This document shows, in pieces, positions 14,024 to 60,753 of a stretch of DNA of 64,000 bases. How positions within the stretch are numbered: the first letter of the stretch is position 1; each line of letters begins with the position of its first letter. Below the pieces are notes generated by a model. That model had not been told where the DNA came from, did not search any database, and saw only the letters and a list, made by a program, of their open reading frames with translations. Where the stretch lies: the IMG/VR virus record IMGVR_UViG_3300043570_001980, positions 62,001-126,000 of that record. One strand, 5' to 3'. Position numbers and translations under genes: made by a program.

Positions 14024-15016
14024 ATGAAAAAACTAGTCATTATGCCCGGTGGTTTCCACCCCTTTCACGCAGGCCATAAAGCTCTGTATGATGCGGCCCA
14101 AGCGGCTTTCCCCAGCGCCGATGTTTACATTGCTGCCACAGCAGACACCTCAACAAGACCTTTTCCTTTTGCAGTCAAGCAAAAGCTGGCAAAATTAGCT
14201 GGCATTCCTGCACACAGATTTATTCAAGTCAAAAATCCTTTCCGTGCCAATGAAATTACACAACATTACGATCCCAGCACTACACAGCTGATTTTTGTAC
14301 GTAGTGAAAAAGATCGTAACGAACAGCCCGTGCCCGGTGGTGTAAAAAAGGATGGTAGTGCTGGCTACTTACAACCATACAAGCGCACAGGCCTACAGCC
14401 AATGACTCAGCATGCTTACATAGCATATTTGCCTGTGGTACAGTTTGGTTCAGGTATGACCAGTGCCACAGAAATTCGTGCCAAATGGCCTGCAATGTCA
14501 CCTGAACAAAAAGCCACATTGGTTAACTCATTATATCCACAGACCCAGGGCAACGAAAAATTAACCAATGTAACAATTAAACTAATTGATGCAGGCATGG
14601 GCAGTGATGTGAAAGAAGCACTACAAGGTCCAGCCTTTGGTGTTGGTGCAGGCGGATTAAATGCAGGAATGCCAATGCCAAATGGTCCAGATAAAGAAGT
14701 TGATGAAGCTACTCTGGTCAATGATCCCGACGAAGGAATTCAAATTCGCCCTACTGGAGGTCTTGGTACCTGGGATGAAGGTAGTCTTAAGCAGAGTTTA
14801 GTACGACAACTGGTTGAGTTAGCAGAAATGCTCAAAGTTGGCAACTATCGCGGAGTGGAACATCTAATGTACAAAGCTGGTGCTATGCAAAGTAAAGTCC
14901 AAGCTCTGGCCCGATTAGAAGATTTTACTGACAAACAAGGAAGACGACCTGTTGCACGTGGGCGAGAAATTGACATTGGCGAAAACAATGACTACGTCAA
15001 TGAAACAAACAAGTAA
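14024..15016 (+). CDS. HxGH cytidylyltransferase-like protein with C-terminal accessory modules
   Basis: IMPGGFHPFHAGH; later DVKE-A and EVDE-A junctions; CTAAATA at 14011. Confidence 0.7.
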   Translation: MKKLVIMPGGFHPFHAGHKALYDAAQAAFPSADVYIAATADTSTRPFPFAVKQKLAKLAGIPAHRFIQVKNPFRANEITQHYDPSTTQLIFVRSEKDRNEQPVPGGVKKDGSAGYLQPYKRTGLQPMTQHAYIAYLPVVQFGSGMTSATEIRAKWPAMSPEQKATLVNSLYPQTQGNEKLTNVTIKLIDAGMGSDVKEALQGPAFGVGAGGLNAGMPMPNGPDKEVDEATLVNDPDEGIQIRPTGGLGTWDEGSLKQSLVRQLVELAEMLKVGNYRGVEHLMYKAGAMQSKVQALARLEDFTDKQGRRPVARGREIDIGENNDYVNETNK

Positions 15017-16183: not shown

Positions 16184-18772
16184 ATGAACATTCATGAACT
16201 AGATTCCTATCGTTTAAGCAACGCAATCAAGTTTAACGACAAGTTAAACCCACGCATTTGGGGAGAGGACGAACATCTTCTCCCTGATGTTCGTGACCAC
16301 TTATTGGCAATTGCGGATGACTTTCGCGAATTCCTTGGCCTAACAGACCTTGAACTAAAAGATGTTACAATATCTGGTTCAAACGCCGCCTACACATATA
16401 CACCACACAGCGACATTGATCTACACTTGGTAGTAGATTTACCCAGGGCCGATGCCAGCGACGTTTATCGTGAGCTGTTTGATGCTAAAAAATATCAGTA
16501 CAACGATCAACACAATTTTAAAATTGGCGGTTACGATGTTGAGTTGTATGTACAGAATGCCAATCAACCGCCGGTGAGCCAAGGCGAGTATTCGGTGTTG
16601 AACAATGACTGGCTACAAGTTCCCAAACGTCAACAAGCTGTGGTTGATGACATGAGCACACGTAGCAAGTACGAAGATCTAGGACACAGAATTGAGTCAG
16701 CCATTGCTGATGGTGATAGACAGCGCATGGAGTCGCTGGCTAAAAAGATACGTGAAATGCGCACAACCGGCCTGGCAAAGACTGGAGAATTTGGTCCAGA
16801 AAATCTAGCATTTAAACTGTTGAGAGCCAGTGGCTTGATTGATCGACTGCGTGAAGCCAGACTTGCCGCAAAAGATCATGAACTAAGTTTACAAGAGCGC
16901 AAGAAAAAGAAAGTACGCTACGGATATGGTGGGTACTGGATGCCAGGATTCTCGTTTGGCGACGGCGAGGGCGGCGATGGTGGTGGTGGCGAAAGTGTAC
17001 AAGAAAACACAGAATCCCCAGACATCAATCAAGACATTAGGCAAGTACTACAACCATTCATTGATAGTTGTGTTGAGTATCTTGGAATTGAACAAGCCCC
17101 AAAAATTATATTAAAACGTGACCCAGAATGGACACGTAGAAACGGCACATTTGGTCAATTTGATCCCGAAACACGTTCAGTCACACTGGCAGTGAGTGGC
17201 CGTCATGTGCTAGATATTTTGCGTACTCTAGCACATGAGCTCACACACTCTCGTCAAAACGAACTAGCTGACATGCCCGTGGATGCAGGCGAAACAGGAT
17301 CCCCTTACGAAGACGAAGCCAATGCCAAAGCAGGCCAAATTATGCGACACTGGGTTGATCAGTATCCTGAATTCTTCAAAGATGCGCCACTAGAGGAATC
17401 TTTAAAAGATAAATTGGCTGCCGCTGCCGCTGCCGCTTGCATAGCTGGCACGCCCGGGTGTGCTACCACACAAAGCATGTCCACCGCTGATACATTGAAA
17501 GGTATTCAAACTGTTGGCCGAACTGCACAAACAGTAAAGCAAATGGGTAGCGCAGGCGCAAAAGAAGAATTAATACAACAACTAAAGAATGAACTGCGTA
17601 GACAACGTGGGCAGTTGCCAGAAACAGTCACTGACGAAGATTATGATCCCAACGGAAAACCACCCGGTCCAGAATTCAAACCCACCATGCCAGCAGGCAC
17701 AGTCAAAGTAGATGTCAGCGATGTCTACGATTGGTACAAGCTAGGACAACACATTAGTGATTTAAAAGGGCTGGGTCAGCATGACTTTGGAAGTGGTCCT
17801 CCTAGTACTATTATGGCATTTGGCAGCGAAGAAGAAGAACACAAGTATATCGACGCATTAAAGAAAACAGGATTGACCACAACTGACATTGATCCTGTTG
17901 ACCCCAATCGACCCAAAGGCATGCCTCGCCAGAAGACAGATCCTACATACAATGTCAACGAAGCATTTGATCAACCTTATCCACTACTTCGATGGGAAAA
18001 GGGTGACTTTGGTGATGTAGACGCAATCGCACGATTAGATGACGGAACTTTTCTAAGTATCATGTTCAACAAGGGATTTAGTAAAGATTCAAAAGAGGAA
18101 GCATGGAGTGTTGAGTTTTATAGAAACAACAGCCAAGAAGTCACAGGTGAAGGTGATTCTCAACGAGTATTTGCCACTGTGTTAAGTGCTATACAAACAT
18201 TTATTAAAAAGTACAAGCCTAATAGAATGACCTTTTCGGCCTCAAAAGAAGTTGAACCGGGACAAAACTCACAAAGCAGAGCCAGACTCTACGATAGTTT
18301 GGTTCAGCGTTATGCCAGAGCTTGGGGTTATAGAGCTTTCCGTGCAGATACCGGCAACAAAGTCATCTACGAACTAAGCAGAAGACAACCTGTAGTAGCA
18401 GAAGGTCCATTTGTTCAAAGAATTGTTCATCCTAATAAAATCAACATCTACGTGCGAGCAGGCAAAAAACCCAAACTGGTTGCAACCAATGTGTCTTATA
18501 ATCTATTAGACAAATACATTGACAAAGTGGTAGACAAATATCCACAGTTTAGGCCCACTGATTTTTCTTTTCAATCTGCTGATGAAAAAGTAATAGCAGA
18601 AGCCACCGGATACATTCCTGTCAACGACAAAGAAGCTCGTGATCCACGCTACAGCATGGCCATCACACAAGACATCAAGCCTGGCGAAGTGCAACGTCAA
18701 GCCAAAAAAATGGGCTGGCGCACCACTGCCGCTGGAACACCACCTACATTAAAGACATCAGGAAGAATGTAA
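16184..18772 (+). CDS. Putative head-packaged polyprotein: pol-beta-like nucleotidyltransferase + HEXXH metallopeptidase-like + further modules
   Basis: ISGSNAAY...SDIDLH; TLAHELTH; junctions VQE-N, LEE-S, VNE-A, VAE-G, IAE-A. Confidence 0.7.
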   Translation: MNIHELDSYRLSNAIKFNDKLNPRIWGEDEHLLPDVRDHLLAIADDFREFLGLTDLELKDVTISGSNAAYTYTPHSDIDLHLVVDLPRADASDVYRELFDAKKYQYNDQHNFKIGGYDVELYVQNANQPPVSQGEYSVLNNDWLQVPKRQQAVVDDMSTRSKYEDLGHRIESAIADGDRQRMESLAKKIREMRTTGLAKTGEFGPENLAFKLLRASGLIDRLREARLAAKDHELSLQERKKKKVRYGYGGYWMPGFSFGDGEGGDGGGGESVQENTESPDINQDIRQVLQPFIDSCVEYLGIEQAPKIILKRDPEWTRRNGTFGQFDPETRSVTLAVSGRHVLDILRTLAHELTHSRQNELADMPVDAGETGSPYEDEANAKAGQIMRHWVDQYPEFFKDAPLEESLKDKLAAAAAAACIAGTPGCATTQSMSTADTLKGIQTVGRTAQTVKQMGSAGAKEELIQQLKNELRRQRGQLPETVTDEDYDPNGKPPGPEFKPTMPAGTVKVDVSDVYDWYKLGQHISDLKGLGQHDFGSGPPSTIMAFGSEEEEHKYIDALKKTGLTTTDIDPVDPNRPKGMPRQKTDPTYNVNEAFDQPYPLLRWEKGDFGDVDAIARLDDGTFLSIMFNKGFSKDSKEEAWSVEFYRNNSQEVTGEGDSQRVFATVLSAIQTFIKKYKPNRMTFSASKEVEPGQNSQSRARLYDSLVQRYARAWGYRAFRADTGNKVIYELSRRQPVVAEGPFVQRIVHPNKINIYVRAGKKPKLVATNVSYNLLDKYIDKVVDKYPQFRPTDFSFQSADEKVIAEATGYIPVNDKEARDPRYSMAITQDIKPGEVQRQAKKMGWRTTAAGTPPTLKTSGRM

Positions 18773-20220
18773 TGAGAGCAACAGAGTTTATAGTTGAAAA
18801 CGCAGATCAAGCCGCAGTCAGTGCTTTGCAAAAAAAGCATGGCTGGTCTACGGGCACAACAGTCAATGGAGATCTTTACTTTACTTGGCAAGGGCTTACT
18901 TATGTGTTTTATGGTGAGCGTATGCGTATCAACGTCCCAAACACTGACCGCTCTATATCAGTTGTGTGGGGCAAGAAACCTGATTGGCAAGGCCGAGGCA
19001 ATGATGAAATTAGTTTTGCACAAGCAGTACAACGAAAAATTCTAAAATTTGACTTGTCAATTTGGCAACAATTGGACCGTGGTCAAATCAATGATAATCA
19101 AGCCCTGCAAAAATTCAAGGCCGAAAATGAACGGCAGGCTAGAGAAGCTCTTGCACAGGATACTACGGAAGGTCGAGAAAAGTTTAACCAGGCTGTGATG
19201 AAACCCGGTTTTGAGTTCAGTCAAGAAATCAACGGTGTCACGTATGAAGTAACAAATGATGAGGGCCCGGGTCCTGTGGTCACTGTAACTGACAAGAACA
19301 AAGAAGTAATTGCTCAAGCGGCATTCTGGAAGCACAAAACTCGTCCAGGATTAGAAAGCCTAAACACTTACGTTGAGCCCGAGTGGCAAGGTCAAGGCAT
19401 TGCCGCAAACATGTATGCTGTGATGCGCATGTTGGGTGCTAACATATCACCGTCTACCATTCAAACAGATGACGGCCAGGCCATGTGGGCCAAGTGGAGT
19501 AAACAAGGTGATGCTAAACATCTAAAGAATCTAAATCCCAAAATCAAAGAGCAAACAGTAACAGAAGGCAAGTTGAGTGTGGATGTACCCAACGAAGAAT
19601 GGTTGCAGGACAAGATTGACTATGCCAAGAGCAAAGGGCGTAACAGCTACGGTGTTCCTTACATGGGCAGTACCACTGCTGGGGTTGTTGGAACTCCACC
19701 TAGAGTGCGTGTAATGCGACTAGCTTCGTTGCCTGGTATGCGCAACGAACAAATGAATGTGCGCAAAAATGATCTAAAGTGGTTAATGGATTACATGGAA
19801 CGCACAGGTAAGTTGCCGCCCATGGGCAGTAATCCCAACGAGGAATACCTGCCCTACATCATGGTGGCCTACAATGGTGAAGCCTGGGTCAACGAAGGCA
19901 ATCATCGTATCATGGCTGCCTACAGATTAAACTGGCCCGACATGCCCATTGAAATACGTTACTTTGATGGTGGTGAAAGAATTGAATCAGGGCCAATGGC
20001 TCCGGGAAAGATTGGGCTGGGTACACCAGTGGCAGAATCTCATGAACAATGTCCTGAGTGTGGCGGAGCAATGTTCAGTGAATTAATGATCAACGAAAAA
20101 CAAGATGCCTGTTACTACAAAGTTAAAAGCCGTTACAAAGTATGGCCTAGTGCTTATGCCAGTGGTGCACTGGTGCAATGTCGTAAAAAAGGTGCGGCCA
20201 ATTGGGGGAACAAAAAATGA
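18772..20220 (+). CDS. Putative head-packaged polyprotein: GNAT acetyltransferase + ParB-like domain + Cys module
   Basis: Starts MRATEFIVE; YVEPEWQGQGIA (GNAT motif A); NEGNHRIMAA (ParB-like); junctions VTE-G and VAE-S. Confidence 0.7.
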   Translation: MRATEFIVENADQAAVSALQKKHGWSTGTTVNGDLYFTWQGLTYVFYGERMRINVPNTDRSISVVWGKKPDWQGRGNDEISFAQAVQRKILKFDLSIWQQLDRGQINDNQALQKFKAENERQAREALAQDTTEGREKFNQAVMKPGFEFSQEINGVTYEVTNDEGPGPVVTVTDKNKEVIAQAAFWKHKTRPGLESLNTYVEPEWQGQGIAANMYAVMRMLGANISPSTIQTDDGQAMWAKWSKQGDAKHLKNLNPKIKEQTVTEGKLSVDVPNEEWLQDKIDYAKSKGRNSYGVPYMGSTTAGVVGTPPRVRVMRLASLPGMRNEQMNVRKNDLKWLMDYMERTGKLPPMGSNPNEEYLPYIMVAYNGEAWVNEGNHRIMAAYRLNWPDMPIEIRYFDGGERIESGPMAPGKIGLGTPVAESHEQCPECGGAMFSELMINEKQDACYYKVKSRYKVWPSAYASGALVQCRKKGAANWGNKK

Positions 20221-21731
20221 GATATCGTGAAATATTAGAAGCCTGCTGGAAAGGCTATCACAAAGAAGGCATGAAAACCATGTTTGGCAAACGCTATCCC
20301 AACTGCGTGAAAAATACCAACGAAGAACTAGAAGAAGATCTACGCAAATGGTTCAAAGAGAAGTGGGTGCGTTTTGGTCCAGATGGCAAGATTCGTGGAG
20401 ATTGTGCCAGGGGTGATGATAGTGAAGGCAAGCCAAAATGTTTGCCACAAAGCAAGGCACACGGTCTAGGTAAAAAGGGTCGTGCAAGTGCGGCAAGTCG
20501 TAAGCGCAGACAAGATCCCAATCCAGAGCGTAGTGGTCCAGCAATCAATGTCAACACCAAGAAAAAATCAAACGAAGGTGCAGTTGGAGTTGGTTGGTCT
20601 CACAAGCCCGAAGCAATTGACAAGATTCATTCTTGGCAAAATTCAGAGACAGGTACAGATTCAAGAATGTTTCAGGGTTACAAAATGAAGTTCACTCCCA
20701 ATGGGATGTTTATCTACAAAGGTGGCGATGTGGTACATAAGCAGCCTGGAGATTTTTCAGACCCGACCAATAAAGACATCATGGCGGCTAAGAGAAGAAT
20801 AACAATGTTGATTAATAAAACGCAAGGCGTGGCGGAAGGCTCTGAGCAACAGTACGCCGTTACCATTGACGCAATCAATCACGGTGTGTTGGCACCTGTA
20901 ACAGTTGTTGCCGGCAGTTCAGAAGAAGCAAAACAAAAGGCCATTGCTGGTGTTAAAGCATCAATGATCAAGCGTGGATATGAATTAATGGTGCGTAGTG
21001 TATCAGCCAAGCCCGAACAAGGTGTGGCGGAAAACATGGACCACAGCAAAGATGGTCGCGCTGTGGAAGAACTCAAGGCAGCATTGATAGATCGCAAACA
21101 ACGATTACAGTCTGCCAGTGATGATCAAGTGTACGATAGCATTGACAAGATCATGACACGTATTGCAAAAACTCACAGCATCAGTGGACAGAAACTGCAT
21201 GACCTGTGGGTGGACCGGTACAAACAAGTACCTGATACATGGATCATGAACGAAGATGCCAGTGGTATAGATTTTGACATGCAGTTTGACGATGACACCG
21301 GGTCGTTTGCAACAGTGACCGCTCGAGCACAAGGCCGCACACTAGGTTCGGTCAAGTTCTTTATGGACGGAGATACCTTGGAAGCAGACATGGTAGAAGT
21401 GGATGACCGGTATCGTGGACAAGGCATTGCGGCGGCCATGTATGACTATGCCAAGAGCCAAGGTTATACAATAGAAAAAAGTTCGAATCTAACACCCGAT
21501 GGTGATCACTTCTGGAACAAAAATCGCGGAGAAGAAACTGTTTGGGAACAAGGCATGGCAGAGAACTTTGCCGACGGTAAGAATCCTGGACGCAAAGGCC
21601 TAGCCAAACGTGTGGGTGTGAACTGCAAACAACCTGTTGCCAAACTGCGTAGTATTGCTGCCAATTCATCAGGCGAACGACAACGAATGGCACATTGGTG
21701 TGCCAACATGAAATCAGGAAAGAAAAAATGA
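20217..21731 (+). CDS. Putative head-packaged polyprotein with a GNAT domain and small Cys/basic modules
   Basis: Starts MRYREILE; CWKGY...PNCVK; DLRKWFKEKWV; VEVDDRYRGQGIA; two QGVAE and one QGMAE. Confidence 0.7.
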   Translation: MRYREILEACWKGYHKEGMKTMFGKRYPNCVKNTNEELEEDLRKWFKEKWVRFGPDGKIRGDCARGDDSEGKPKCLPQSKAHGLGKKGRASAASRKRRQDPNPERSGPAINVNTKKKSNEGAVGVGWSHKPEAIDKIHSWQNSETGTDSRMFQGYKMKFTPNGMFIYKGGDVVHKQPGDFSDPTNKDIMAAKRRITMLINKTQGVAEGSEQQYAVTIDAINHGVLAPVTVVAGSSEEAKQKAIAGVKASMIKRGYELMVRSVSAKPEQGVAENMDHSKDGRAVEELKAALIDRKQRLQSASDDQVYDSIDKIMTRIAKTHSISGQKLHDLWVDRYKQVPDTWIMNEDASGIDFDMQFDDDTGSFATVTARAQGRTLGSVKFFMDGDTLEADMVEVDDRYRGQGIAAAMYDYAKSQGYTIEKSSNLTPDGDHFWNKNRGEETVWEQGMAENFADGKNPGRKGLAKRVGVNCKQPVAKLRSIAANSSGERQRMAHWCANMKSGKKK

Positions 21732-22132
21732 GAAATTTTATTAATCTACTGGAAGCTATAGAAAAAGGCTGCCCGCTTGCTACACAAAGCATTGAACTAA
21801 ATTTAAAAAATCGTCAAAAAGCCATAGACGAATACCATTATGGACCTCTCAATCCCAACGAGCCCAACGATGAATATTGGGAAGAATTAGCAGACAAATG
21901 GAACACAAATGACATTAAATCAGTAAAACAAAACCGCTGTGGGAATTGTGCAGCCTTTGACATTTCTGAATCCATGCAAGATTGTATTGCAAAAGGCATT
22001 GGTGAGGAACCAGGGTCAGATCCACACGATACAATAGATGCTGGGCAACTAGGATATTGTAAGTTTTTGAAATTTAAATGTGCCGCCAAACGAACTTGCG
22101 ATGCCTGGGTAGAAGGCGGCCCTGTTACATGA
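21728..22132 (+). CDS. Cys-rich hypothetical protein with an IP-like propeptide
   Basis: MRNFINLLE-A; CGNCAAF, YCKFLKFKC, TCDAW. Confidence 0.6.
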   Translation: MRNFINLLEAIEKGCPLATQSIELNLKNRQKAIDEYHYGPLNPNEPNDEYWEELADKWNTNDIKSVKQNRCGNCAAFDISESMQDCIAKGIGEEPGSDPHDTIDAGQLGYCKFLKFKCAAKRTCDAWVEGGPVT

Positions 22133-22275
22133 AATTTGGTCGTAAAAAATAATGTCAGCATCTTCAAAATCTATTTTATTAGTAGGATGCTTGTTTAGCG
22201 ATTATTGCGGATTTGGAGAGATCATTGGAAATCATAAGTAATCAATAAAGATTGCCTTTGCAAATAGGAAAAAAA

Positions 22276-23769
22276 ATGAGATTTAACGAACTTCAAGAAA
22301 CTACCCTAGGCGGATTTAAAGTAAAACCGTTGCATATTGAGAACACCGGTGTTAGTGAAGAGCTTGAGCATAACTTTGACAAACACATAGTTGCGGTCAC
22401 TGTCAGTGATCCTCACAGTTCAGCTGTGACACAACGTCAAGAACTAAAACAACGCAAGGCCAAGGTACGTGCATTAGATCGTGAATCTGCTGTTAATACT
22501 GCTGTCAATTGGTATCGTAAACAAGGCTACAAAGTACACGATCATCACTACATTGGCACAGATAACGGTATTGCCGAAGGCTCTGTAACTAAAAAGCCGC
22601 AACCCTATAATGACCCCAATTGGTCCAAAAACTTACCTAAAGAAAAATTAGATGCATTGGCTGGACCAAGATATAAAAAAGATAAAAAAGACAAAGGTGT
22701 AGCCGAAGCAATCAAGTTAAATGCGCCACAACGCACAATACCACGTGATGAATTGCAGGGCTATGCTGACCGTATCAAGACTGGCACCAAAACCAAACGT
22801 GACAAGTTTAGCCCTATCATTCACGGCAGCAATATCAAGGCCATTACCAAAGATGATGAGAACACTGAGTGGGACTTGGATGATTTGTCCAAGCAGATTA
22901 CCACACGTCCCCGGGCCATACTTGGCACTAATGCCAAAATGGAAAAGTCTAAAACTGAAGGCGAAATCATTTATGACCTGACATTGCCTGCACTATCAGG
23001 TATTGTTGTGGATGAAGATACTGGCGACTTTGTGGAAATTACCACATGCCCGGGTGCTGGTGCTTGCCAACTATTCTGTTATGCTAGAAAAGGTGGCTAT
23101 GTTATGTTCCCTGCTAGCAGTATGAGTGCGGCGCAGGCACTAAACTTCCTGGTCAATGACCCTGAAGGTTATACTGCCAGAGTCAATCAAGAAATCAAAA
23201 CAATCAAAGCCAAAACAGACAAAGCTGGTGTACAGTTAGTTGTTCGTTGGCACGATGCTGGTGATTTCTTCTCCAAGGAGTATTTGGATCTAGCATATGG
23301 TGTTGCCCAATCCAATCCTGATGTGCAGTTTTATGCCTACACCAAGATGGGCGATGTTGCCACAGGTGCCGCACCTGCTAACTTTACCATGAACTTTTCA
23401 TCAGGCAGCAAGCGTGGTGAAGAAAAGAAAGTGGAATTCTACAAACAACAAAACCCTGGTGCCACAGTCAAGCAAGGTGTTACTGTTCCCAAGGACATGT
23501 TCTTTGATCTAATTGCACGTAAAGGCACTAGCTTGATCAAAGACGCCAAGGGTCGCACACAATTTGCCAGCCCCGAAGCACTTGACACATTTAAGCAACG
23601 TATTGCACAACAGTACAAGGTTGCTCCTGATTCAATTATTACCTACGATCAAATGCTAGCAACTCCAGTGGGCACAGAGCCCAAGTGGAATGTTATTGTA
23701 CAACCGGGTGCTGGTGACCGTGCAGCCAATCGCAAGGATGTAATTGACAGTTACTTGATGTTCCACTGA
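22276..23769 (+). CDS. Putative head-packaged polyprotein with a C-terminal Gp88-like domain
   Basis: MRFNELQE-T; GIAE-G and GVAE-A junctions; TCPGAGAC..FCYA, VRWHDAGDF, FYAYTK. Confidence 0.6.
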   Translation: MRFNELQETTLGGFKVKPLHIENTGVSEELEHNFDKHIVAVTVSDPHSSAVTQRQELKQRKAKVRALDRESAVNTAVNWYRKQGYKVHDHHYIGTDNGIAEGSVTKKPQPYNDPNWSKNLPKEKLDALAGPRYKKDKKDKGVAEAIKLNAPQRTIPRDELQGYADRIKTGTKTKRDKFSPIIHGSNIKAITKDDENTEWDLDDLSKQITTRPRAILGTNAKMEKSKTEGEIIYDLTLPALSGIVVDEDTGDFVEITTCPGAGACQLFCYARKGGYVMFPASSMSAAQALNFLVNDPEGYTARVNQEIKTIKAKTDKAGVQLVVRWHDAGDFFSKEYLDLAYGVAQSNPDVQFYAYTKMGDVATGAAPANFTMNFSSGSKRGEEKKVEFYKQQNPGATVKQGVTVPKDMFFDLIARKGTSLIKDAKGRTQFASPEALDTFKQRIAQQYKVAPDSIITYDQMLATPVGTEPKWNVIVQPGAGDRAANRKDVIDSYLMFH

Positions 23770-23770
23770 T

Positions 23771-23971
23771 ATGCGCTACAACGAAATCAAGCCTGTTAAA
23801 ACCAAGATGAAAACCTATGTTGTAAAGATAAAATTACAGCAAACAGGCTACACCAATATCATCGACACCACAGTGATGGCTCGCACACCAGAAATGGCTC
23901 GTAGACTACTCCGACAACAATACAACAACAAGCATGTGGTTGTTGGACAGCCAAAAGAACTCAAAGTTTAG
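23771..23971 (+). CDS. Small basic hypothetical protein
   Basis: MRYNEI start; coupled to the upstream gene. Confidence 0.55.
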   Translation: MRYNEIKPVKTKMKTYVVKIKLQQTGYTNIIDTTVMARTPEMARRLLRQQYNNKHVVVGQPKELKV

Positions 23972-23998
23972 TTCAGTTAACGCCCAACTAAATACTGG

Positions 23999-24298
23999 GT
24001 GAAAAAACAATTTGTAAAAGCTTTTTTTGATTTACATTGCGACTGGCAAGGATTACCACCTTCCTATCGAATCTACGTCAACGATGAATTATTTGCTGAA
24101 CGTACATTCTATTGGGAAAATGAATACCTAAAAGAAATACTGCAAATAGAAGCACCGGCAGGAATGTACACAGTTAAGTTTGAGCCGCTAAAGCCCAACT
24201 TGGCCACGTTCCAGATGGAAAATTATGGAATTGAACACGGATCGGCTCGCTGGGTTGATCAACAAACCTTGGAGATTATATTCGATGCGACTACGTGA
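23999..24298 (+). CDS. Hypothetical protein
   Basis: GTG start 5 nt after CTAAATA (23988). Confidence 0.5.
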   Translation: MKKQFVKAFFDLHCDWQGLPPSYRIYVNDELFAERTFYWENEYLKEILQIEAPAGMYTVKFEPLKPNLATFQMENYGIEHGSARWVDQQTLEIIFDATT

Positions 24299-24452
24299 AA
24301 TAACTGAAAGTATGGGCGGCACATGCTCAGGCGGTATTGCTACTGTGGCTCAACCAATGGGCGAAGTGATAACTAGGACTAAGAGTACTAAACCGGCTAA
24401 ATATGCTAATAGCGCACAAAAAATGGTGCCTGTAAAACCTAGGAAAAAATAA
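24285..24452 (+). CDS. Small basic protein with an IP-like propeptide
   Basis: MRLREITE-S start at ATG 24285. Confidence 0.55.
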   Translation: MRLREITESMGGTCSGGIATVAQPMGEVITRTKSTKPAKYANSAQKMVPVKPRKK

Positions 24453-24892
24453 TGTTATCGGACGATTTAAAGACCTTGCTGGCCACACAATATGCTTTGA
24501 GTATCAAAGCACAGAATTTTCACTGGAATGTGGAAGGTCCTGACTTTGCTCAATACCACGACTTCTTTGCCAACTTCTATGAAGAGGTTTACAGCGCAGT
24601 TGATCGAATCGCTGAATACATTCGCACCTTGCAAGAATACAGCCCGGGAAGTTTTGAGCGTTTTCAAGAACTGTCTATTATACAAGGACAAACAAAGATC
24701 CCACGTGCTCGATTGATGATTGAAGAATTGCTGTCAGACAACGGCGCCCTAATTGATCTGTTGAATCAGACATTTGTCAGTGCTGAACAAGAAAACAACC
24801 AGGGCATTGCCAACTTCATTGCTGAACGCTTGGACGCACAGGCCAAGCATGGCTGGATGCTGAGAAGTTTCTTAAAAGGCGACCGGGCATGA
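24452..24892 (+). CDS. dps: Dps / DNA-binding ferritin-like protein
   Basis: KAQNFHWNVEGPDF..HDFF...Y...D.IAEYIR, and C-terminal KHGWML. Confidence 0.92.
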   Translation: MLSDDLKTLLATQYALSIKAQNFHWNVEGPDFAQYHDFFANFYEEVYSAVDRIAEYIRTLQEYSPGSFERFQELSIIQGQTKIPRARLMIEELLSDNGALIDLLNQTFVSAEQENNQGIANFIAERLDAQAKHGWMLRSFLKGDRA

Positions 24893-25482
24893 GCGATTTA
24901 AAAGATATTTTAGCAAAGCTAGATAAAATTGCCGAGGGAGACATTACTCCCGTGAATGTTAAATCTGGACTTAATAAACAACAAAGGCGAGTACCTGAAC
25001 TTCCTGCGCTGTTCAAGCCAAGAAGTATCAATGTATTAACCAATAAAACCGATCCTGAGCATCCTACCAAGGGATACTTTGTTGGCTCAGAAAGTGTTGA
25101 ACAAGACGAAGATCAAGAAACCATCGCCGAAGTGGTCACATCCGAAGATGTAGTCAGCACAGTGAAGAAAAAACTAGGCGATTACCTAGCTGACCTTTCA
25201 AAAGAAATCAAGTCAGACTCTGATCTCAAGGACAAGATTCCACAAGAAGTTGATCAAATTGGTTCTTCAGTTAGAACTATTACCACAGACGACGGTCAAG
25301 AAATTAAAATCCACGGCAACGAGGATGATGGTTTCAGAATTACAATTAAAAACAAACCACATAGTGCAAAGTTTGAATCACTCAAACATGCCGAGATGGC
25401 CTGCGAAATGTACTGCTCACGTCGTAGAGCACGTACTATGGAAACTTCACAGGCCACACCTGATTACCTGGATGAAGCATAA
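24889..25482 (+). CDS. Hypothetical acidic protein, putative head-packaged
   Basis: KIAE-G, TIAE-V, ends YLDEA. Confidence 0.55.
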   Translation: MSDLKDILAKLDKIAEGDITPVNVKSGLNKQQRRVPELPALFKPRSINVLTNKTDPEHPTKGYFVGSESVEQDEDQETIAEVVTSEDVVSTVKKKLGDYLADLSKEIKSDSDLKDKIPQEVDQIGSSVRTITTDDGQEIKIHGNEDDGFRITIKNKPHSAKFESLKHAEMACEMYCSRRRARTMETSQATPDYLDEA

Positions 25483-27164
25483 TGAATCTCAATAACTTAT
25501 TCGAAGCTGCCAACCCGGCGCAACAAGCTGCCATTGCTATAGCAAAGAAAAAAGCTGGTGAAAAACCCAAGAACAAAGGCCTGACTGAATTTGCTCCACC
25601 CGGTGGGAACAACGGTGATTCGGGACGCTGGTACACAGATGACGAGCTGGCAGACATCATTGGTGATGATTGGTTTGAAGATTTTGATGTCAGCAACGAT
25701 GGATTTAACATTGATGCATACGGCGAAAAGGCCAAGAAGAATTTAGTGGGCTATGCCAACTCATGGTTTGATGACAAAGGTTACAATGTTAACGTAATGG
25801 GTGTAGAACATAATGATGTTGACCATGATTTAAAATGGTACATTGTTGGTAGTTTCCAGAATGATAATTTTGCAGGTAAAGATGTAGACGAAGGCTTGGG
25901 TTCCAAGTTAGCTGGATTAGGTCTTGCTGGAGCAATGGCTCTTGGCTCAGCAGGCGCCAATGCCAGAGTTACTCCTGATGGCCAAGGCGGTTTCACTGGC
26001 GGGCTAAAGCCAAGTACAACAGTGACAGCACCTGCTGATAATAAACCGGCCGCAGAAGCACCAAAAGGATTTAGCAAAGAATATCTACAAAAGGCAGCAG
26101 ACCCAAATAGATTTGGTAGATACATGATCAGTGTTGAAAAAGCACAAGAATTGCTGAAGAACATGCAAGAAGCTGTAGCGGAAGGTTCACAGCGAGTTGA
26201 TTCACTTGTGACCGACGCACTAAAAATAATGCAGGGTTCAGACGTAAATGATGCTGTACGAGCTCTAAAGACTGTGCTTGGAGATAGAGAATACAACGGC
26301 CGCCGTGGTCATTACAATTTCTATGTTCGACAACTGATGGATATGTATGGCCAGCAAGGTGTAACAGAAGCTGGTTACAGAAACTACGATGACAATCGCA
26401 CAGGTTTTGGTAAGAATTCACAAGCATATCGTGCTGATGGTGGTGCCAACGATGAAGATCACGAAAGCGATCGTCGCCGTGAACAACAAGTGCAGTCCGG
26501 TACATGGTACATTCGTCTCAATGGAAAAATCATCAAAGACAAACAAGGCAATCCTTATTCATTCCGCGGTAAGGCTGCCGCAAACAAAGCCGCACTAACA
26601 ATGCAGGCTAAACTGTTCAATCAGGGCAAAGAGTTTATGTTGACTACCAATCCCAACGATAACCCTCAAGGTGTGGCGGAAGGCTGGAAAGATGTTGTTG
26701 CAGGTAGTGCAATGGCATTAAGTTCACTAGGTGTTGGCGCTCAAACAATGCCAAGCATGAATGGTCAACAAGTAGAATTAGCAAACAAATATTTTCAGGT
26801 CTTAGTGCAACGAGCAAAAGAAGATGGTAGAGAATTAGACACAAGAACATTGAATGTGTTGAAGGCAAAGGCACAAGATGCGGCTGCACAAAAGATGCAA
26901 CAATCTAAGAAATCACAAACTAATTTTCCAAGTCAAGGCAGTGAGCGTAGAGTTTCTAAAGATATAGGTACTTTTGAATCGCAAGGCGTGGCAGAAGGCC
27001 CTGCTGTAGACGCATACATGGCAGGCAAGAGTCCGGCACTGGCTCACTTTGCTGATCAACTAGATAAGAGTACTGAAGTAAATTTTCAGAAAAACAAAGG
27101 TGTAGCGGAAGGTCAACGAAGCGGCTACGGTCGCGGCTACGCTAGTTATAAATCCAGCAAGTAA
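25482..27164 (+). CDS. Putative head-packaged polyprotein with multiple GVAE junctions and internal signal-peptide-like segments
   Basis: MNLNNLFE-A; GLTE-F, VDE-G, AVAE-G, QGVTE-A, two QGVAE-G, KGVAE-G. Confidence 0.7.
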   Translation: MNLNNLFEAANPAQQAAIAIAKKKAGEKPKNKGLTEFAPPGGNNGDSGRWYTDDELADIIGDDWFEDFDVSNDGFNIDAYGEKAKKNLVGYANSWFDDKGYNVNVMGVEHNDVDHDLKWYIVGSFQNDNFAGKDVDEGLGSKLAGLGLAGAMALGSAGANARVTPDGQGGFTGGLKPSTTVTAPADNKPAAEAPKGFSKEYLQKAADPNRFGRYMISVEKAQELLKNMQEAVAEGSQRVDSLVTDALKIMQGSDVNDAVRALKTVLGDREYNGRRGHYNFYVRQLMDMYGQQGVTEAGYRNYDDNRTGFGKNSQAYRADGGANDEDHESDRRREQQVQSGTWYIRLNGKIIKDKQGNPYSFRGKAAANKAALTMQAKLFNQGKEFMLTTNPNDNPQGVAEGWKDVVAGSAMALSSLGVGAQTMPSMNGQQVELANKYFQVLVQRAKEDGRELDTRTLNVLKAKAQDAAAQKMQQSKKSQTNFPSQGSERRVSKDIGTFESQGVAEGPAVDAYMAGKSPALAHFADQLDKSTEVNFQKNKGVAEGQRSGYGRGYASYKSSK

Positions 27165-27274: not shown

Positions 27275-27360
27275 ACACCTTAGGACCGGTACTTGTTACC
27301 GTGGTGTAGGCGGCTGCTGCCTTGGACGGCCTGATTCGCTACCAGGAATCCAAAAGTGAG
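27275..27360 (+). ncRNA. Candidate structured RNA (multi-hairpin with possible pseudoknot)
   Basis: GC-rich island in an AT-rich intergenic region: ACACC/GGTGT, CGGTA/TACCG, AGGC/GCCT, TGGA/TCCA, CCTG/CAGG. Confidence 0.5.
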
Positions 27361-27372
27361 CATAATTACTAT

Positions 27373-28443
27373 ATGTCAAAATACAAACTAAATTGGATAC
27401 AAAAACCACTAGTACAATTTCCAGCAAAAAATTTTCAAAATCTTGTTTGTCTTAGTCCTTTTGTGGGCATGTGCATTGATACAGATGGTGGAATAACATT
27501 ATGTGGTTGTCAAGATTGGATGCCCTCCAAGGTTGGAAATTTATTAATCAATTCACTAGACGAAATATTGTCCAATGCTGGCAGTACCAATATACGTCAA
27601 AGCATCATCAACGGAACCTACGACTTTTGCAATGAAAACACCTGTGGAGTTTTAAAAAGTGATCTACTTAATGTTAAAGAAAATGTAGGCGATGATATTA
27701 AGCCCTTGCTTCTTGATGCATCTCGTTACATTATGCCCAAAGAGATTTGGGTATCCGGCGATCGCACCTGTAATCTCAGTTGCCCAAGTTGTCGAACGGA
27801 AATTATAAAAAACAATGATGCACAGACCGAACATCTAGAACACCTAGGGCAAACGCTAAAATCAAATCTGTTTTGTACACCCACTGATCGACCAATTGTA
27901 CTACACGTGAGTACCAGTGGGGAACTGTTTGCTAGTCCAATGTTGTTGTCGTTTGTTAACACAATATCAACTGAGGATTTTCCAAACGTACAATTGGCTA
28001 TACAATCAAATGGTTTACTGGTACCAGAACGATGGCATCGACTCGAGAGCATGCAAGAAAAAGTAAAATCAATTACCATTACCACTGATGCCGCAAGGCC
28101 CGCTACATATGAAAAATTGCGTCGTGGTGGACGCTGGGACGACCTACAACATGCATTATTGTGGATCTCTGAAAAGAAAAAACAAAATGGCATGCTGTTT
28201 AAAATTCGAATGATTGTTCAAAAAGATAATTTTGAAGAAATGCTAGAATTTTACAACATGGGACAGGAACTGGGCGTAGATTTAGTCGAATATGGAAGAA
28301 TTGGAAATTGGGGTACATTTTCCAACGATGAATTTAAGTTGATTGATGTATTTAATCCCAAACACAGTCAATATCCACAAGCACAAGAAAACTTAGATCA
28401 AATAAAAAATCTTGACCGAGTAATTTTATTTGGCGGATTATAA
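27373..28443 (+). CDS. Radical SAM protein with an N-terminal SPASM/twitch-like Cys cluster
   Basis: CNLSCPSC (CxxxCxxC) and CLSPF...LCGC. Start moved to ATG 27373. Confidence 0.8.
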   Translation: MSKYKLNWIQKPLVQFPAKNFQNLVCLSPFVGMCIDTDGGITLCGCQDWMPSKVGNLLINSLDEILSNAGSTNIRQSIINGTYDFCNENTCGVLKSDLLNVKENVGDDIKPLLLDASRYIMPKEIWVSGDRTCNLSCPSCRTEIIKNNDAQTEHLEHLGQTLKSNLFCTPTDRPIVLHVSTSGELFASPMLLSFVNTISTEDFPNVQLAIQSNGLLVPERWHRLESMQEKVKSITITTDAARPATYEKLRRGGRWDDLQHALLWISEKKKQNGMLFKIRMIVQKDNFEEMLEFYNMGQELGVDLVEYGRIGNWGTFSNDEFKLIDVFNPKHSQYPQAQENLDQIKNLDRVILFGGL

Positions 28444-28786: not shown

Positions 28787-29380
28787 ATGGCATTAGTACC
28801 AATGGTGCTGGAACAAACCAGCAAAGGTGAGCGTAGCTATGATATCTATAGCCGCTTGTTACGTGACCGTGTGATTTTACTTGAAGGTGAAGTACATGAT
28901 CAAATGGCAAATCTAATTGTTGCTCAACTACTATTTCTCGAGAGCGAAAACCCAGACAAAGATATCAGTATGTACATCAACAGCCCTGGAGGTAGTGTCA
29001 CTGCTGGTATGGCTATCTATGATACCATGCAGTTTATTAAACCCGATGTTAATACCATTGTAATGGGACAAGCATGTAGCATGGGAAGTTTGTTGGCACA
29101 ATCGGGTGCCAAAGGCAAGCGCATGATCCTGCCTAATGCACGACACATGATACACCAACCTAGTGGTGGCGCTCGTGGCATGCAAAGCGATATCGAAATT
29201 AGCTACAAAGAAATTACCTATTTGAAGAAACGTTTAACTGAAATTTATGTCAAGCACAACTCAACGGGTAAAACTTTTGAACAGCTAACTGAAGATATGG
29301 ATCGTGACAAGTTTATGTCAGCAGAGGAATCAGTTAATTACGGTCTTGCCGACAAAGTGATAACTACACGTGATATTTAA
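28787..29380 (+). CDS. clpP: ATP-dependent Clp protease proteolytic subunit
   Basis: [23 protein letters not shown] (catalytic Ser), MIHQP, DRD. Confidence 0.95.

Positions 29381-58837: not shown

Positions 58838-60753
<1,916 letters not shown>

What the first reader, a model, noticed from the sequence alone, without database searches (positions are those of the whole stretch)
17393..26741. Cryptic signal-peptide or membrane-anchor segments that begin right after predicted cleavage sites
Seen: LEE-SLKDKLAAAAAAACIAGTPGC (17393-17462, lipobox-like end); VDE-GLGSKLAGLGLAGAMALGSAGANA-R (25893-25964, AxA end); VAE-GWKDVVAGSAMALSSLGVGA-Q (26682-26741). Each shows a basic residue, a hydrophobic core and a small-residue end. 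Inference: head proteolysis exposes new N-terminal export or membrane signals, so ejected fragments could insert into the inner membrane or periplasm (ejection conduit or superinfection exclusion).
Basis: inference. Interest (0 to 1): 0.7.

Follow-up and report, generated by a model that had tools for sequence, protein, structure and literature searches.

The report
Masked export signals in phage polyproteins
A giant T4-like phage strings many small proteins into polyproteins, and some pieces begin, right after a predicted head-protease cut site, with a bacterial export signal; virion-delivered proteins may therefore be re-routed to the new host's cell envelope.

Summary
Three Ala/Gly-rich hydrophobic segments lie 4-5 residues after [VILM]-x-E|[GASN] sites in two polyproteins (A, 16184-18772; G, 25482-27164). 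The chance estimate for 3 of 3 is about 1e-4. The window is a fragment of a ~342-kb T4-superfamily jumbo phage. A near-identical, 95%-complete genome has a gp21-type prohead protease. Several block genes start with T4 capsid-targeting-like peptides (MRATEFIVE|N against T4 MKTYQEFIAE|A).

Relatives make the signal reading strong:
- The same polyprotein slot carries twin-arginine signals that pass the curated TIGR01409 cut-off.
- Cassette 2 keeps an invariant A-x-A|RV end in about 20 relatives.
- Cassette 1 is internal and preceded by a Glu site in all 32 representatives examined. Its Cys is aligned with canonical lipoboxes (LSGC, LVGC) in divergent copies and replaced by AQA|Q in two.
- Cargos in relatives include a GH19 muramidase and an M48 peptidase.
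- No Met-initiated copy without an upstream Glu site was found. The shortest genes are capsid-targeting peptide + site + signal + cargo.

Best reading: export signals are kept silent until head maturation, then used after ejection. Cleavage, packaging and export are inferred, not shown. This is a new variant of T4 internal-protein and polyvalent-protein systems.

The parts
16184..18772 (+). Polyprotein A (862 aa): NTase module (aa 1-236), Gly-rich linker, zincin HExxH module (aa 275-405; HELTH at 17234-17248), lipoprotein-type signal cassette, DUF6934 module, C-terminal modules.
   Evidence: the NTase is a stand-alone gene in cyanophages and Maribacter phages; module alignment; coordinates.
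17390..17398 (+). L-E-E| predicted cleavage site and module boundary at the end of the zincin module.
   Evidence: in L014 the zincin module ends at the same P-L-E-E and is followed by a different module; all 32 representatives examined have a [VILM]xE site here.
17399..17461 (+). Segment 1: n-region SLKDK, h-region LAAAAAAACIAG, lipobox-like TPGC (Cys426 would be the +1 residue).
   Evidence: C[IV]AG[TAS]PGC is conserved. Divergent homologues have LSGC or LVGC at the aligned Cys, and two have AQA|Q instead.
17462..17638 (+). Core cargo of cassette 1: a conserved ~55-aa predicted helical piece (..VGRTAQT.K.MG.AGA.EE..), ending at TVTDE|.
18772..20220 (+). Polyprotein B (482 aa), N-terminus MRATEFIVE|N (CTS-like); internal sites TVTE|G and PVAE|S; C-terminal WPSAYASG module.
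20217..21731 (+). Polyprotein C, N-terminus MRYREILE|A (CTS-like); three GVAE|/GMAE| sites; GNAT acetyltransferase module.
21728..22132 (+). Protein D, N-terminus MRNFINLLE|A (CTS-like).
22276..23769 (+). Polyprotein E, N-terminus MRFNELQE|T; sites GIAE|G and GVAE|A; GP88 (PF17338) module.
25482..27164 (+). Polyprotein G (560 aa): CTS-like MNLNNLFE|A (25482-25505), then cassettes separated by VDE|, AVAE|, GVTE| and GVAE| (x3).
   Evidence: (cassette insertion and swap among relatives).
25884..25892 (+). V-D-E| predicted cleavage site before segment 2.
   Evidence: the conserved upstream module ends with V-x-E in all relatives, and the cassette is an insertion exactly here; every relative that includes the upstream residues has [VIL][DE]E here.
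25893..25964 (+). Segment 2: Sec-type signal-like peptide GLGSK + LAGLGLAGAMALGS + AGANA|R.
   Evidence: The h-region varies; A-[NQH]-[AS]|R-V is conserved, with R and V invariant.
25965..26183 (+). Cargo of cassette 2: Pro/Thr/Ala-rich linker plus a conserved ~30-aa helical motif (..EYLQKAADPNR.GRYMISVEKAQELL..).
   Evidence: AF2 model of low confidence.
26670..26681 (+). G-V-A-E| predicted cleavage site before segment 3.
   Evidence: The same slot after NPND.PQGV[AS]E holds a Tat-type cassette in G005, L009 and L028.
26682..26741 (+). Segment 3: Sec-type signal-like peptide GWKD + VVAGSAMALSSLG + VGA|Q.
   Evidence: relatives end in AVA|Q, ANA|Q or AGA|Q; weak in-silico support for docking to E. 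coli LepB.
26742..26996 (+). Cargo of cassette 3: ~85 aa, predicted helical hairpin, ends at QGVAE|.

Best explanation
The block 16184-27164 encodes the internal head proteins of a ~342-kb T4-superfamily jumbo phage, written as polyproteins of exchangeable cassettes.

1. Short N-terminal peptides of the T4 capsid-targeting type would take the polyproteins into the prohead core.
2. The gp21-type prohead protease would cut them after Glu at [VILM]-x-E|[GASN], the same kind of site as T4 IPIII I-A-E|A.
3. Three cassettes in the window start 0-5 residues after such a site with an export signal: two SPase-I type (AxA end) and one lipoprotein type (Cys426). Relatives also use twin-arginine signals.
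4. In the primary product the signal is internal, or is capped by an acidic propeptide, and so is silent in the producing cell. Maturation makes it N-terminal.
5. After ejection into the next cell, the host Sec, Tat or Lol machinery would move the cargo to the periplasm or envelope at time zero. The signals are weakly hydrophobic and Ala/Gly-rich, which suits post-translational export.

Shown here: the segments, the association with sites, its conservation, the Tat-model matches in relatives, the envelope-type cargos in relatives, the CTS resemblance, and the protease gene in the near-identical genome.

Inferred: cleavage, packaging, ejection, export, and what the three small cargos of the window do.
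For: Phage identity:
- The window lies in an IMG/VR record that is 35% complete.
- L003/G001 is 100% identical over protein G and is a 341,990-bp, 95%-complete genome.
- G001 has a Peptidase_S77 protease (85 bits; 32% identical to T4 gp21, E 1e-19). It also has a scaffold protein and a gp23 capsid protein whose N-terminus carries LLE|G, ILE|N and LKE|N near the position aligned with the T4 cut.

Capsid-targeting resemblance:
- T4 ipII and ipIII start MKTYQEFIAE|A.
- The window has MRATEFIVE|N, MRYREILE|A, MRNFINLLE|A and MNLNNLFE|A. Relatives have MKAREFITE|A and MRAQEFITE|G.
- Only 3-7 of about 400 ORFs per genome match the strict pattern.
- Literature: the CTS is the first 10 residues of IPIII, and gp21 cuts after Glu (PMC9026906).

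Sites are module boundaries:
- Cassettes are inserted, deleted or swapped exactly at the sites.
- In L114 the same modules are separate genes, each starting with a CTS-like peptide.

Signal nature:
- TIGR01409 scores 23.5, 27.8 and 19.1 bits (cut-off 16.7) for three post-site fragments of relatives, with the profile starting at fragment residue 2-4.
- Pfam TAT_signal scores 23.6 bits, above its 22.7 cut-off, for one of them.
- One Tat cassette sits in the very slot that holds segment 3.
- Cassette 2 keeps A-x-A|RV while its h-region drifts.
- Cassette 3 ends in VGA, AVA, ANA or AGA before Q.
- Cassette 1 is preceded by a [VILM]xE site in all 32 representatives examined (33 hits at E up to 1e-3). 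Its Cys is aligned with LSGC, LVGC or TAGC in divergent copies, and two copies carry AQA|Q instead.

Cargos in relatives: Glyco_hydro_19 (E 3.8e-16) behind a Sec-type signal and Peptidase_M48 (E 1.8e-8) behind a Tat-type signal.

Masking: the shortest complete genes are CTS + site + signal + cargo (P0018, P0022, P0027). No Met-initiated copy without an upstream Glu site was found.

A distinct class of signal: post-site signals have a best-10 hydrophobicity of 1.72 and A+G of 0.44-0.82. Ordinary N-terminal signals of the same phages score 2.46 and 0.1-0.35 (Mann-Whitney P 1.8e-5).

Weak support: LepB with segment 3 scored 0.46 against a best control of 0.00. The tool calls this 'weak support': the mark was reached by 51 of 78 solved complexes and 2 of 108 mismatched pairs, but at 0.60 or under by only 5 of those 78 and by all 4 mismatches that passed. 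The runs agree in at least 57% of contacts and the partner's pLDDT is at least 47.
Against: - There is no protein-level evidence. All relatives are metagenomic and no isolate matched protein G.
- The block lies about 140 kb from the head module, next to ClpP, the DNA polymerase and a Dps-like gene.
- No T4-type late promoter was found.
- Polyprotein A has no CTS-like N-terminus; its NTase starts at residue 1 as in the stand-alone homologues.
- The window's own segments match no signal HMM, and SignalP, LipoP and TatP could not be run.
- The lipobox of segment 1 has Pro at -2, which is not canonical.
- The h-regions are weakly hydrophobic, and AF2 gives them no structure.
- Polyprotein A carries its own zincin module, which could be the processing enzyme instead.
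- Export of a protein that arrives through a phage tail has no precedent that I could find.
Confidence: 0.5

Rival explanations
1. Cleavage and ejection are the same, but the new Ala/Gly-rich N-termini insert into the inner membrane by themselves. They would act like viral fusion peptides or glycine-zipper helices, anchoring cargo or helping to build the DNA conduit. Sec, Tat and signal peptidases would play no part.
For: - The composition (A+G 0.44-0.82, low hydrophobicity) differs from the phage's ordinary signal peptides.
- An 820-aa protein of the same phage has LNE|GWKGE followed by a 43-residue glycine-zipper-like run and further membrane-type helices.
- L113 has a site followed by a TM-like helix without a basic n-region.
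- From my own knowledge: T7 and P22 ejection proteins form envelope conduits (see also PMC8402733).
Against: - Twin-arginine motifs that pass curated cut-offs have no role in spontaneous insertion.
- The AxA ends are conserved.
- Lipobox and AxA interchange in homologous cassettes, which is the signature of peptidase-processed signals.
- The cargos are soluble enzymes such as GH19 and M48.
Confidence: 0.2
2. The polyproteins are not packaged. They would be cut in the cytoplasm of the producing cell, for example by the zincin module of A or another protease. The freed pre-proteins would then be exported in that same cell, for lysis, superinfection exclusion or envelope remodelling.
For: - The block sits among replication and proteostasis genes rather than head genes.
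- A carries an HExxH zincin module directly upstream of cassette 1 in most homologues.
- Such modules are proposed as self-processing enzymes of polyvalent proteins (PMC5512222).
- GH19 with a signal peptide resembles a secreted endolysin.
Against: - The N-termini match the T4 capsid-targeting peptide, and the site matches T4 IPIII I-A-E|A.
- Stand-alone copies still carry a CTS-like propeptide in front of the signal instead of a plain Met start. That is needless for direct secretion, and its net negative charge should hinder it.
- Many polyproteins with sites lack any zincin module.
Confidence: 0.17
3. The segments are only flexible low-complexity Ala/Gly linkers between modules, and their likeness to signal peptides is accidental.
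For: AF2 gives them low confidence and no structure. The window's own segments match no HMM. Hydrophobicity is modest.
Against: - The order site, basic residue, uncharged run, small-x-small end is fixed in dozens of diverged copies.
- R and V after the AxA end are invariant, and the Cys is near-invariant.
- Tat-model matches occur in the same slot.
- 3 of 3 by chance is about 1e-4.
- Most other junctions between modules have no such segment.
Confidence: 0.06
4. The cassettes are translated on their own from internal starts, giving ordinary Met-initiated pre-proteins; the polyprotein context would be irrelevant.
For: Two Tat cassettes of relatives keep an in-frame ATG (ADM-NRRGFL, ADM-SRRGFL) with GGAAG 5 nt upstream.
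Against: None of the three window segments has a usable in-frame start with sensible spacing. Another Tat cassette has ATA at that position. No Met-initiated copy was found in the database searches.
Confidence: 0.04

Closest known systems
T4 internal proteins (IPI, IPII, IPIII, Alt): capsid-targeting sequence plus gp21 processing
   Same: - A short N-terminal peptide of the form M-[KR]-x-x-x-E-F-I-x-E|A.
- Cleavage after Glu at [LIV]-x-E by a Peptidase_S77 prohead protease.
- Highly variable cargo that is exchanged among relatives.
- Genes lying outside the head module.
   Different: - Here the cargos are strung into polyproteins of up to about 10 cassettes with internal sites.
- Some cassettes begin with Sec-, Tat- or lipoprotein-type signals.
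- T4 IPs are described as acting in the cytoplasm. I found no report of an export signal on them.
Phage-type polyvalent proteins (Iyer, Burroughs, Anand, de Souza, Aravind 2017; PMC5512222)
   Same: Large multidomain proteins that combine a Pol-beta NTase, zincin MPTase, GNAT, ParB and lysozyme modules. They are predicted to be packaged, injected and cut into units that act at different places in the cell.
   Different: That paper proposes the embedded MPTase as the processing enzyme, and it never mentions signal peptides, lipoproteins or the periplasm. Here the boundaries carry a T4 prohead-protease-type motif, and some units carry export signals.
Processed ejection and inner-body proteins of giant phages (phiKZ, 201phi2-1, SPN3US)
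   Same: Many head proteins are cut after Glu by a gp21-related protease, and the fragments are ejected into the host (PMC9026906, PMC5694885, PMC10052503).
   Different: This is a different phage lineage (the DNA polymerase is nearest to Atu_ph07, Phosso and Rak2-like phages). No export signals are reported at the new N-termini in those systems: the full-text search counted no occurrence of 'signal peptide' in PMC5694885, PMC10052503 or PMC9026906.
Bacterial Sec (SPase I), lipoprotein (SPase II) and Tat signal peptides
   Same: The three-part design (basic n-region, uncharged h-region, small-x-small or lipobox c-region). Relatives match the Tat profile, and lipobox and AxA interchange among homologues.
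   Different: - They are not at the N-terminus of the translation product.
- They are much less hydrophobic and richer in Ala/Gly than the phage's own ordinary signals.
- The lipobox in the window has Pro at -2.
Fusion peptides of enveloped viruses, exposed by proteolytic maturation (influenza HA2, HIV gp41)
   Same: A Gly/Ala-rich hydrophobic stretch that becomes N-terminal only after a maturation cut. This comparison rests on my own knowledge.
   Different: No membrane fusion is involved. The AxA, lipobox and RR features point to host export machinery rather than spontaneous insertion.

Membership tests
T4-type internal head proteins | N-terminal capsid-targeting peptide like MKTYQEFIAE | tested here: met
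   B MRATEFIVE|N, C MRYREILE|A, D MRNFINLLE|A, G MNLNNLFE|A, against T4 ipII and ipIII. Not met for A, which starts with its NTase domain.
T4-type internal head proteins | Genome encodes a gp21-family (Peptidase_S77) prohead protease | tested here: met
   Absent from the 128.8-kb fragment. Present in the near-identical 95%-complete genome G001 (85 bits; 32% identical to T4 gp21) and in G002, G003 and G005.
T4-type internal head proteins | Cut after Glu at [LIV]-x-E in the prohead; fragments present in virions and ejected | not testable with these tools
   Only the motif and its coincidence with module boundaries are seen. No proteomic data exist for this metagenomic phage.
Sec-type (SPase I) signal peptide | Basic n-region, uncharged h-region of 7-15 residues, small residues at -3 and -1 | tested here: met
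   Segments 2 and 3 have K at -1 or -2 of the run, then ANA|R and VGA|Q. The ends are conserved in relatives. The h-region is weakly hydrophobic.
Sec-type (SPase I) signal peptide | Located at the N-terminus of the translated protein | tested here: not met
   The segments start at residues 138 and 401 of G. They would become N-terminal only after the inferred cleavage.
Sec-type (SPase I) signal peptide | Recognised by a trained predictor or by signal peptidase | tested here: inconclusive
   SignalP is not available. LepB with segment 3 scored 0.46 against a best control of 0.00, verdict 'weak support'. The runs agree in at least 57% of contacts and the partner's pLDDT is at least 47.
Bacterial lipoprotein signal (SPase II) | Lipobox [LVI][ASTVI][GAS]C with invariant Cys after an h-region | tested here: inconclusive
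   The window has T-P-G-C, and Pro at -2 is not canonical (rule from memory). The Cys is invariant in close relatives. Divergent homologues have LSGC, LVGC or TAGC at the aligned Cys, and two have AQA|Q instead. The YgdI/YgdR lipoprotein HMM gives only E 0.11.
Twin-arginine (Tat) signal | S/T-R-R-x-F-L-K motif before a weakly hydrophobic h-region | tested here: not met
   The window's segments have no RR and no HMM hit. The feature is met in relatives: TIGR01409 scores 23.5, 27.8 and 19.1 bits against a 16.7 cut-off, and Pfam TAT_signal scores 23.6 and 22.0.
Phage-type polyvalent proteins | Several unrelated effector domains in one polypeptide, typically with a zincin MPTase | tested here: met
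   A has an NTase (phrog_36119 E 1.6e-40; stand-alone homologues), a conserved HExxH module (metallopeptidase HMMs only at E about 0.01) and DUF6934. C has a GNAT and E has GP88.

The most novel reading that the evidence does not exclude
Phage heads carry ready-made pre-proteins. Their Sec, Tat or lipoprotein signals are kept silent by an upstream propeptide or polyprotein until the prohead protease cuts. After injection the recipient cell's own export machinery sends them to the periplasm or outer membrane. The phage would thus place envelope effectors at the first moment of infection, before any phage gene is expressed. In relatives these effectors include a muramidase and a metallopeptidase; in the window they are small proteins of unknown role.
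Probability: 0.4. Interest if true: 0.9.

Novelty: new variant of a known kind. Interest (0 to 1): 0.78.

Why it matters
If true, it adds a compartment to what virion-delivered phage proteins can reach. They would act not only in the cytoplasm, as T4 IPI* and Alt do, but also in the periplasm and outer membrane, using host Sec, Tat and Lol.

It would also be a clean natural example of a signal peptide held inactive by a removable propeptide.

It suggests how a phage could set up superinfection exclusion, receptor masking or counter-measures against envelope-located defences at time zero.

It offers a design rule (CTS-site-signal-cargo) for delivering proteins to the periplasm of target bacteria from T4-type heads. 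The idea is directly testable in the existing T4 CTS packaging system.

Tried and rejected
- Nucleotide and protein searches of isolate phages found no match for the block or for protein G. Only the NTase module of A matched.
- DNA-level explanation of the motif: rejected, because the codons vary.
- T4 late promoter TATAAATA: one match in 64 kb, fewer than expected by chance. The sigma-70 and terminator scans were uninformative. Short TAAATA-like strings lie close to some starts and were not pursued.
- Pfam, NCBIfam and PHROGs on the three cassettes of the window gave nothing significant.
- The ESM Atlas gave only weak leads (scores 0.59-0.64). 'Putative lipoprotein' clusters were nearest to cassette 1.
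- AF2 models of cassettes 2 and 3 had low confidence (pLDDT 55 and 61), so no fold search was run on them.
- Search for stand-alone Met-initiated secreted homologues: none found. An apparent one (P0003) is an artefact of a scaffold gap inside a 715-aa polyprotein.
- A phage-encoded type I signal peptidase: none in four complete genomes.
- Internal translation starts: possible only for two Tat cassettes of relatives, not in the window.
- A broad scan for 'hydrophobic run near a site' over whole genomes was too noisy and was replaced by stricter definitions.
- Sequencing-read tools were not used. They cannot address proteolysis or export.

Full report
WHAT THE WINDOW IS

The window is part of a 128,804-bp IMG/VR virus record that CheckV rates 35% complete. 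Its family-B DNA polymerase (29397-32057) is 51% identical to that of Sinorhizobium phage Phosso, 46% to Agrobacterium phage Atu_ph07 and about 43% to Rak2-like jumbo phages. A search of viral contigs with protein G found 35 related loci. One of them (L003) is 100% identical over the protein and lies on a 341,990-bp contig, G001, rated 95% complete. I fetched G001 and three related complete genomes (G002, G003, G005) in full.

G001 has a T4-type head module. The module includes a Peptidase_S77 protease (85 bits; 32% identical to T4 gp21, E 1e-19), a scaffold protein and a gp23-type capsid protein. The module is absent from the window's own fragment, which does not reach that part of the genome.

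THE OBSERVATION

All three segments exist, in frame, in two long '+' ORFs: A (16184-18772, 862 aa) and G (25482-27164, 560 aa).
- Segment 1 is A 406-426, nt 17399-17461.
- Segment 2 is G 138-161, nt 25893-25964.
- Segment 3 is G 401-420, nt 26682-26741. Both G segments are exactly as stated.

Each has the same order of parts: a [VILM]-x-E site, 4-5 residues that include Lys, an uncharged Ala/Gly-rich run, and a small-residue end (TPGC, ANA|R, VGA|Q). Only 5.0% of positions in the seven block proteins lie that close behind a site, so 3 of 3 has a chance of about 1.2e-4.

THE SITES

The motif x-G-[VIM]-[AT]-E|[GAN] occurs repeatedly in five consecutive genes and nowhere else in the 128.8-kb contig. 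It is almost confined to that block in the 342-kb genome. Codons vary, so selection acts on the protein.

Alignments show that the sites are module boundaries.
- Cassette 2 of the window is an insertion exactly between V-D-E and the next module.
- The slot after NPND.PQGV[AS]E holds different cassettes in different relatives.
- The zincin module of A ends at P-[LV]-E-E in five relatives. It is followed by cassette 1 in four of them and by another module in the fifth.
- In one relative (L114) the same modules are separate, tightly packed genes.

WHY A HEAD PROTEASE

T4 ipII and ipIII begin MKTYQEFIAE|A (read from NC_000866). Four block genes of the window begin MRATEFIVE|N, MRYREILE|A, MRNFINLLE|A and MNLNNLFE|A. 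Relatives have MKAREFITE|A and MRAQEFITE|G. Only 3-7 of about 400 ORFs per genome match the strict pattern.

The literature states that the first 10 residues of IPIII are the capsid-targeting sequence. Residues 4 and 7 matter for targeting, residues 8 and 10 for processing, and gp21 cuts after Glu (PMC9026906). The T4 site I-A-E|A is the same motif as the V-A-E|G and I-A-E|A sites of the block. The G001 capsid protein has LLE|G, ILE|N and LKE|N just upstream of the region that aligns with mature T4 gp23. This supports cleavage in the prohead but does not prove it. Polyprotein A has no such N-terminus.

WHY THEY ARE EXPORT SIGNALS AND NOT CHANCE

(a) Tat signals in relatives. The corresponding post-site positions in relatives carry twin-arginine signals, for example QGVSE|ADMNRRGFLRGLGAAALAGAAGGAMA|Q in G005, in the very slot of segment 3. 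Three such fragments pass the curated TIGR01409 cut-off with 23.5, 27.8 and 19.1 bits against 16.7. The profile starts at fragment residue 2-4. One passes the Pfam TAT_signal cut-off, and two more score 22.0 and 16.5.

(b) Cassette 2. It has about 30 relatives, of which 20 sequences (the window's included) were aligned. The h-region drifts, but A-[NQH]-[AS]|R-V is kept, with R and V invariant. Every sequence that includes the upstream residues has [VIL][DE]E just before the segment.

(c) Cassette 3. Its relatives end in VGA, AVA, ANA or AGA before Q.

(d) Cassette 1. An exhaustive search of 1.84 billion cluster representatives gave 33 hits, all in proteins of 209-1634 aa. In the 32 whose flanks I examined, the cassette is internal and preceded by a [VILM]-x-E site. 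Most keep C[IV]AG[TAS]PGC. Divergent copies have canonical lipoboxes (LSGC, LVGC, TAGC) at the aligned Cys, and two have lost the Cys and carry AQA|Q instead. Switching between lipobox and AxA in front of one cargo is what genuine exported proteins do.

(e) Cargos in relatives. Cargos behind such signals include a GH19 muramidase (E 3.8e-16) and an M48 metallopeptidase (E 1.8e-8). Both are enzyme classes that typically act in the cell envelope (my own knowledge).

(f) Masking. No Met-initiated copy without an upstream Glu site was found. The shortest complete genes read CTS, site, signal, cargo. P0018 starts MRAAQFVKGLAE|DELDE|GWKDK, followed by the h-region and AQA|RV. P0022 and P0027 start MRINEIVLE|. 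An apparent stand-alone copy was an artefact of a scaffold gap.

A DISTINCT CLASS OF SIGNAL

The same phages encode many ordinary N-terminal signal peptides and canonical lipoproteins (MKK..LAAC..LTGC). Their best 10-residue hydrophobicity averages 2.46, with A+G of 0.1-0.35. The post-site signals average 1.72, with A+G of 0.44-0.82 (Mann-Whitney P 1.8e-5; the native set contains some false positives, which makes the test conservative).

My reading, which is inference, is as follows. Weakly hydrophobic, Tat-like h-regions avoid co-translational capture of the polyprotein in the producing cell. They also suit post-translational export of a protein that arrives ready-made. A recurrent start, E|GW[KR], is shared by several otherwise unrelated cassettes.

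WHAT REMAINS WEAK

- The window's own segments hit no signal HMM.
- I could not run SignalP, LipoP or TatP.
- The lipobox of segment 1 has Pro at -2.
- AF2 models of cassettes 2 and 3 are of low confidence. The signal part is unstructured, and cargo 3 is a helical hairpin.
- A complex prediction of E. coli LepB with the first 45 residues of cassette 3 scored 0.46, against a best control of 0.00. The tool's verdict is 'weak support': the mark was reached by 51 of 78 solved complexes and 2 of 108 mismatched pairs, but at 0.60 or under by only 5 of those 78 and by all 4 mismatches that passed. The runs agree in at least 57% of contacts and the partner's pLDDT is at least 47. No interface was reported.
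- The block lies about 140 kb from the head genes, among a Dps-like gene, a radical-SAM gene, ClpP and the DNA polymerase.
- No late-promoter signal was found.
- The phage has no signal peptidase of its own, so host enzymes would be needed.

MECHANISM AND RIVALS

Best reading (confidence 0.5): these are T4-type internal-protein polyproteins whose cassettes are freed by the prohead protease. Three cassettes in the window then expose a silent Sec- or lipoprotein-type signal. After ejection, that signal directs the cargo to the envelope of the new host.

Rivals:
- Spontaneous membrane insertion of the new N-termini, like fusion peptides or glycine zippers (0.2). The composition favours it, as does an 820-aa membrane-type protein elsewhere in the genome. 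The Tat, AxA and lipobox features argue against it.
- Processing and export in the producing cell, perhaps by the zincin module (0.17). The CTS-like propeptides placed in front of signals argue against it.
- Mere linkers (0.06).
- Internal translation starts (0.04). These are possible only for two Tat cassettes of relatives.

COMPARISON WITH WHAT IS KNOWN

The system works like T4 internal proteins (CTS plus gp21) and like the 'polyvalent proteins' of Iyer et al. 2017. The latter combine NTase, MPTase, GNAT and lysozyme modules and are predicted to be injected and cut into units. That paper never mentions signal peptides, lipoproteins or the periplasm, and neither does the jumbo-phage survey. 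Full-text searches that combined capsid-targeting, prohead-protease or ejection-protein terms with 'signal peptide' found no description of this arrangement. This covers only the held library.

I therefore rate it a new variant of a known kind. If the export step is real, the mechanism itself would be new.

Noticed in passing
window 10044-12335, 28787-29380, 59134-60753: The phage encodes a ClpA/ClpB-like double-AAA+ unfoldase (Clp_N, AAA, AAA_2, ClpB_D2-small), a bona fide ClpP (E 2e-81) and a GroEL-type chaperonin (E 4e-77). Together they form a near-complete proteostasis kit that flanks the polyprotein block.
   Followed up: partly
window 20095-20220 (end of B); L033, L023 and G003 polyproteins: Two short modules recur at polyprotein ends and junctions. 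One is a Cys-rich module, KYK.SINCSHPKGFSQ[KR]AHCAG[KR]KK. The other is a C-terminal module..KVWPSAYASG.LVQCRKKGAANWG (phrog_727). Their function is unknown.
   Followed up: no
G001:270618-273080 (outside the window and its contig): An 820-aa protein has QGVAE|G and LNE|GWKGE sites. The second site is followed by a 43-residue glycine-zipper-like run and further membrane-type helices. It lies near two small CTS-tagged genes (MRAREFIAE.., MRAREFITE.. at 265.9-266.7 kb). It is a candidate membrane-active ejection protein.
   Followed up: partly
L114:8866-12841: In one relative (a 46-kb Logan contig) the modules that are fused in the window occur as separate, overlapping small genes. Each starts with MR..E[FL][VI].E. 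Fusion into polyproteins and fission into CTS-tagged genes seem freely interchangeable.
   Followed up: partly
G005:338683-340341(-) and G003:162670-164073: Two Tat cassettes keep an in-frame ATG (..E|ADM-[NS]RRGFL..) with GGAAG 5 nt upstream. This may be a relic of a once independent Tat-substrate gene, or an internal start.
   Followed up: partly
window 27322-28443 and 42221-44101: There are two radical-SAM genes. One is a B12-binding radical SAM enzyme. The first lies directly downstream of polyprotein G.
   Followed up: no
window 24452-24892: A Dps/ferritin-like gene (PF00210, E 6e-23; PHROG 'DNA binding protein') sits inside the polyprotein block, between E and F.
   Followed up: no
window 14024-15016; L113:1622-3769: The cytidylyltransferase-like gene just upstream of the block has VKE|A, VDE|A, PDE|G and WDE|G sites in its C-terminal half. 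In relative L113 its homologue is the first module of a 715-aa polyprotein that ends with cassette 3, so it probably belongs to the same system.
   Followed up: partly
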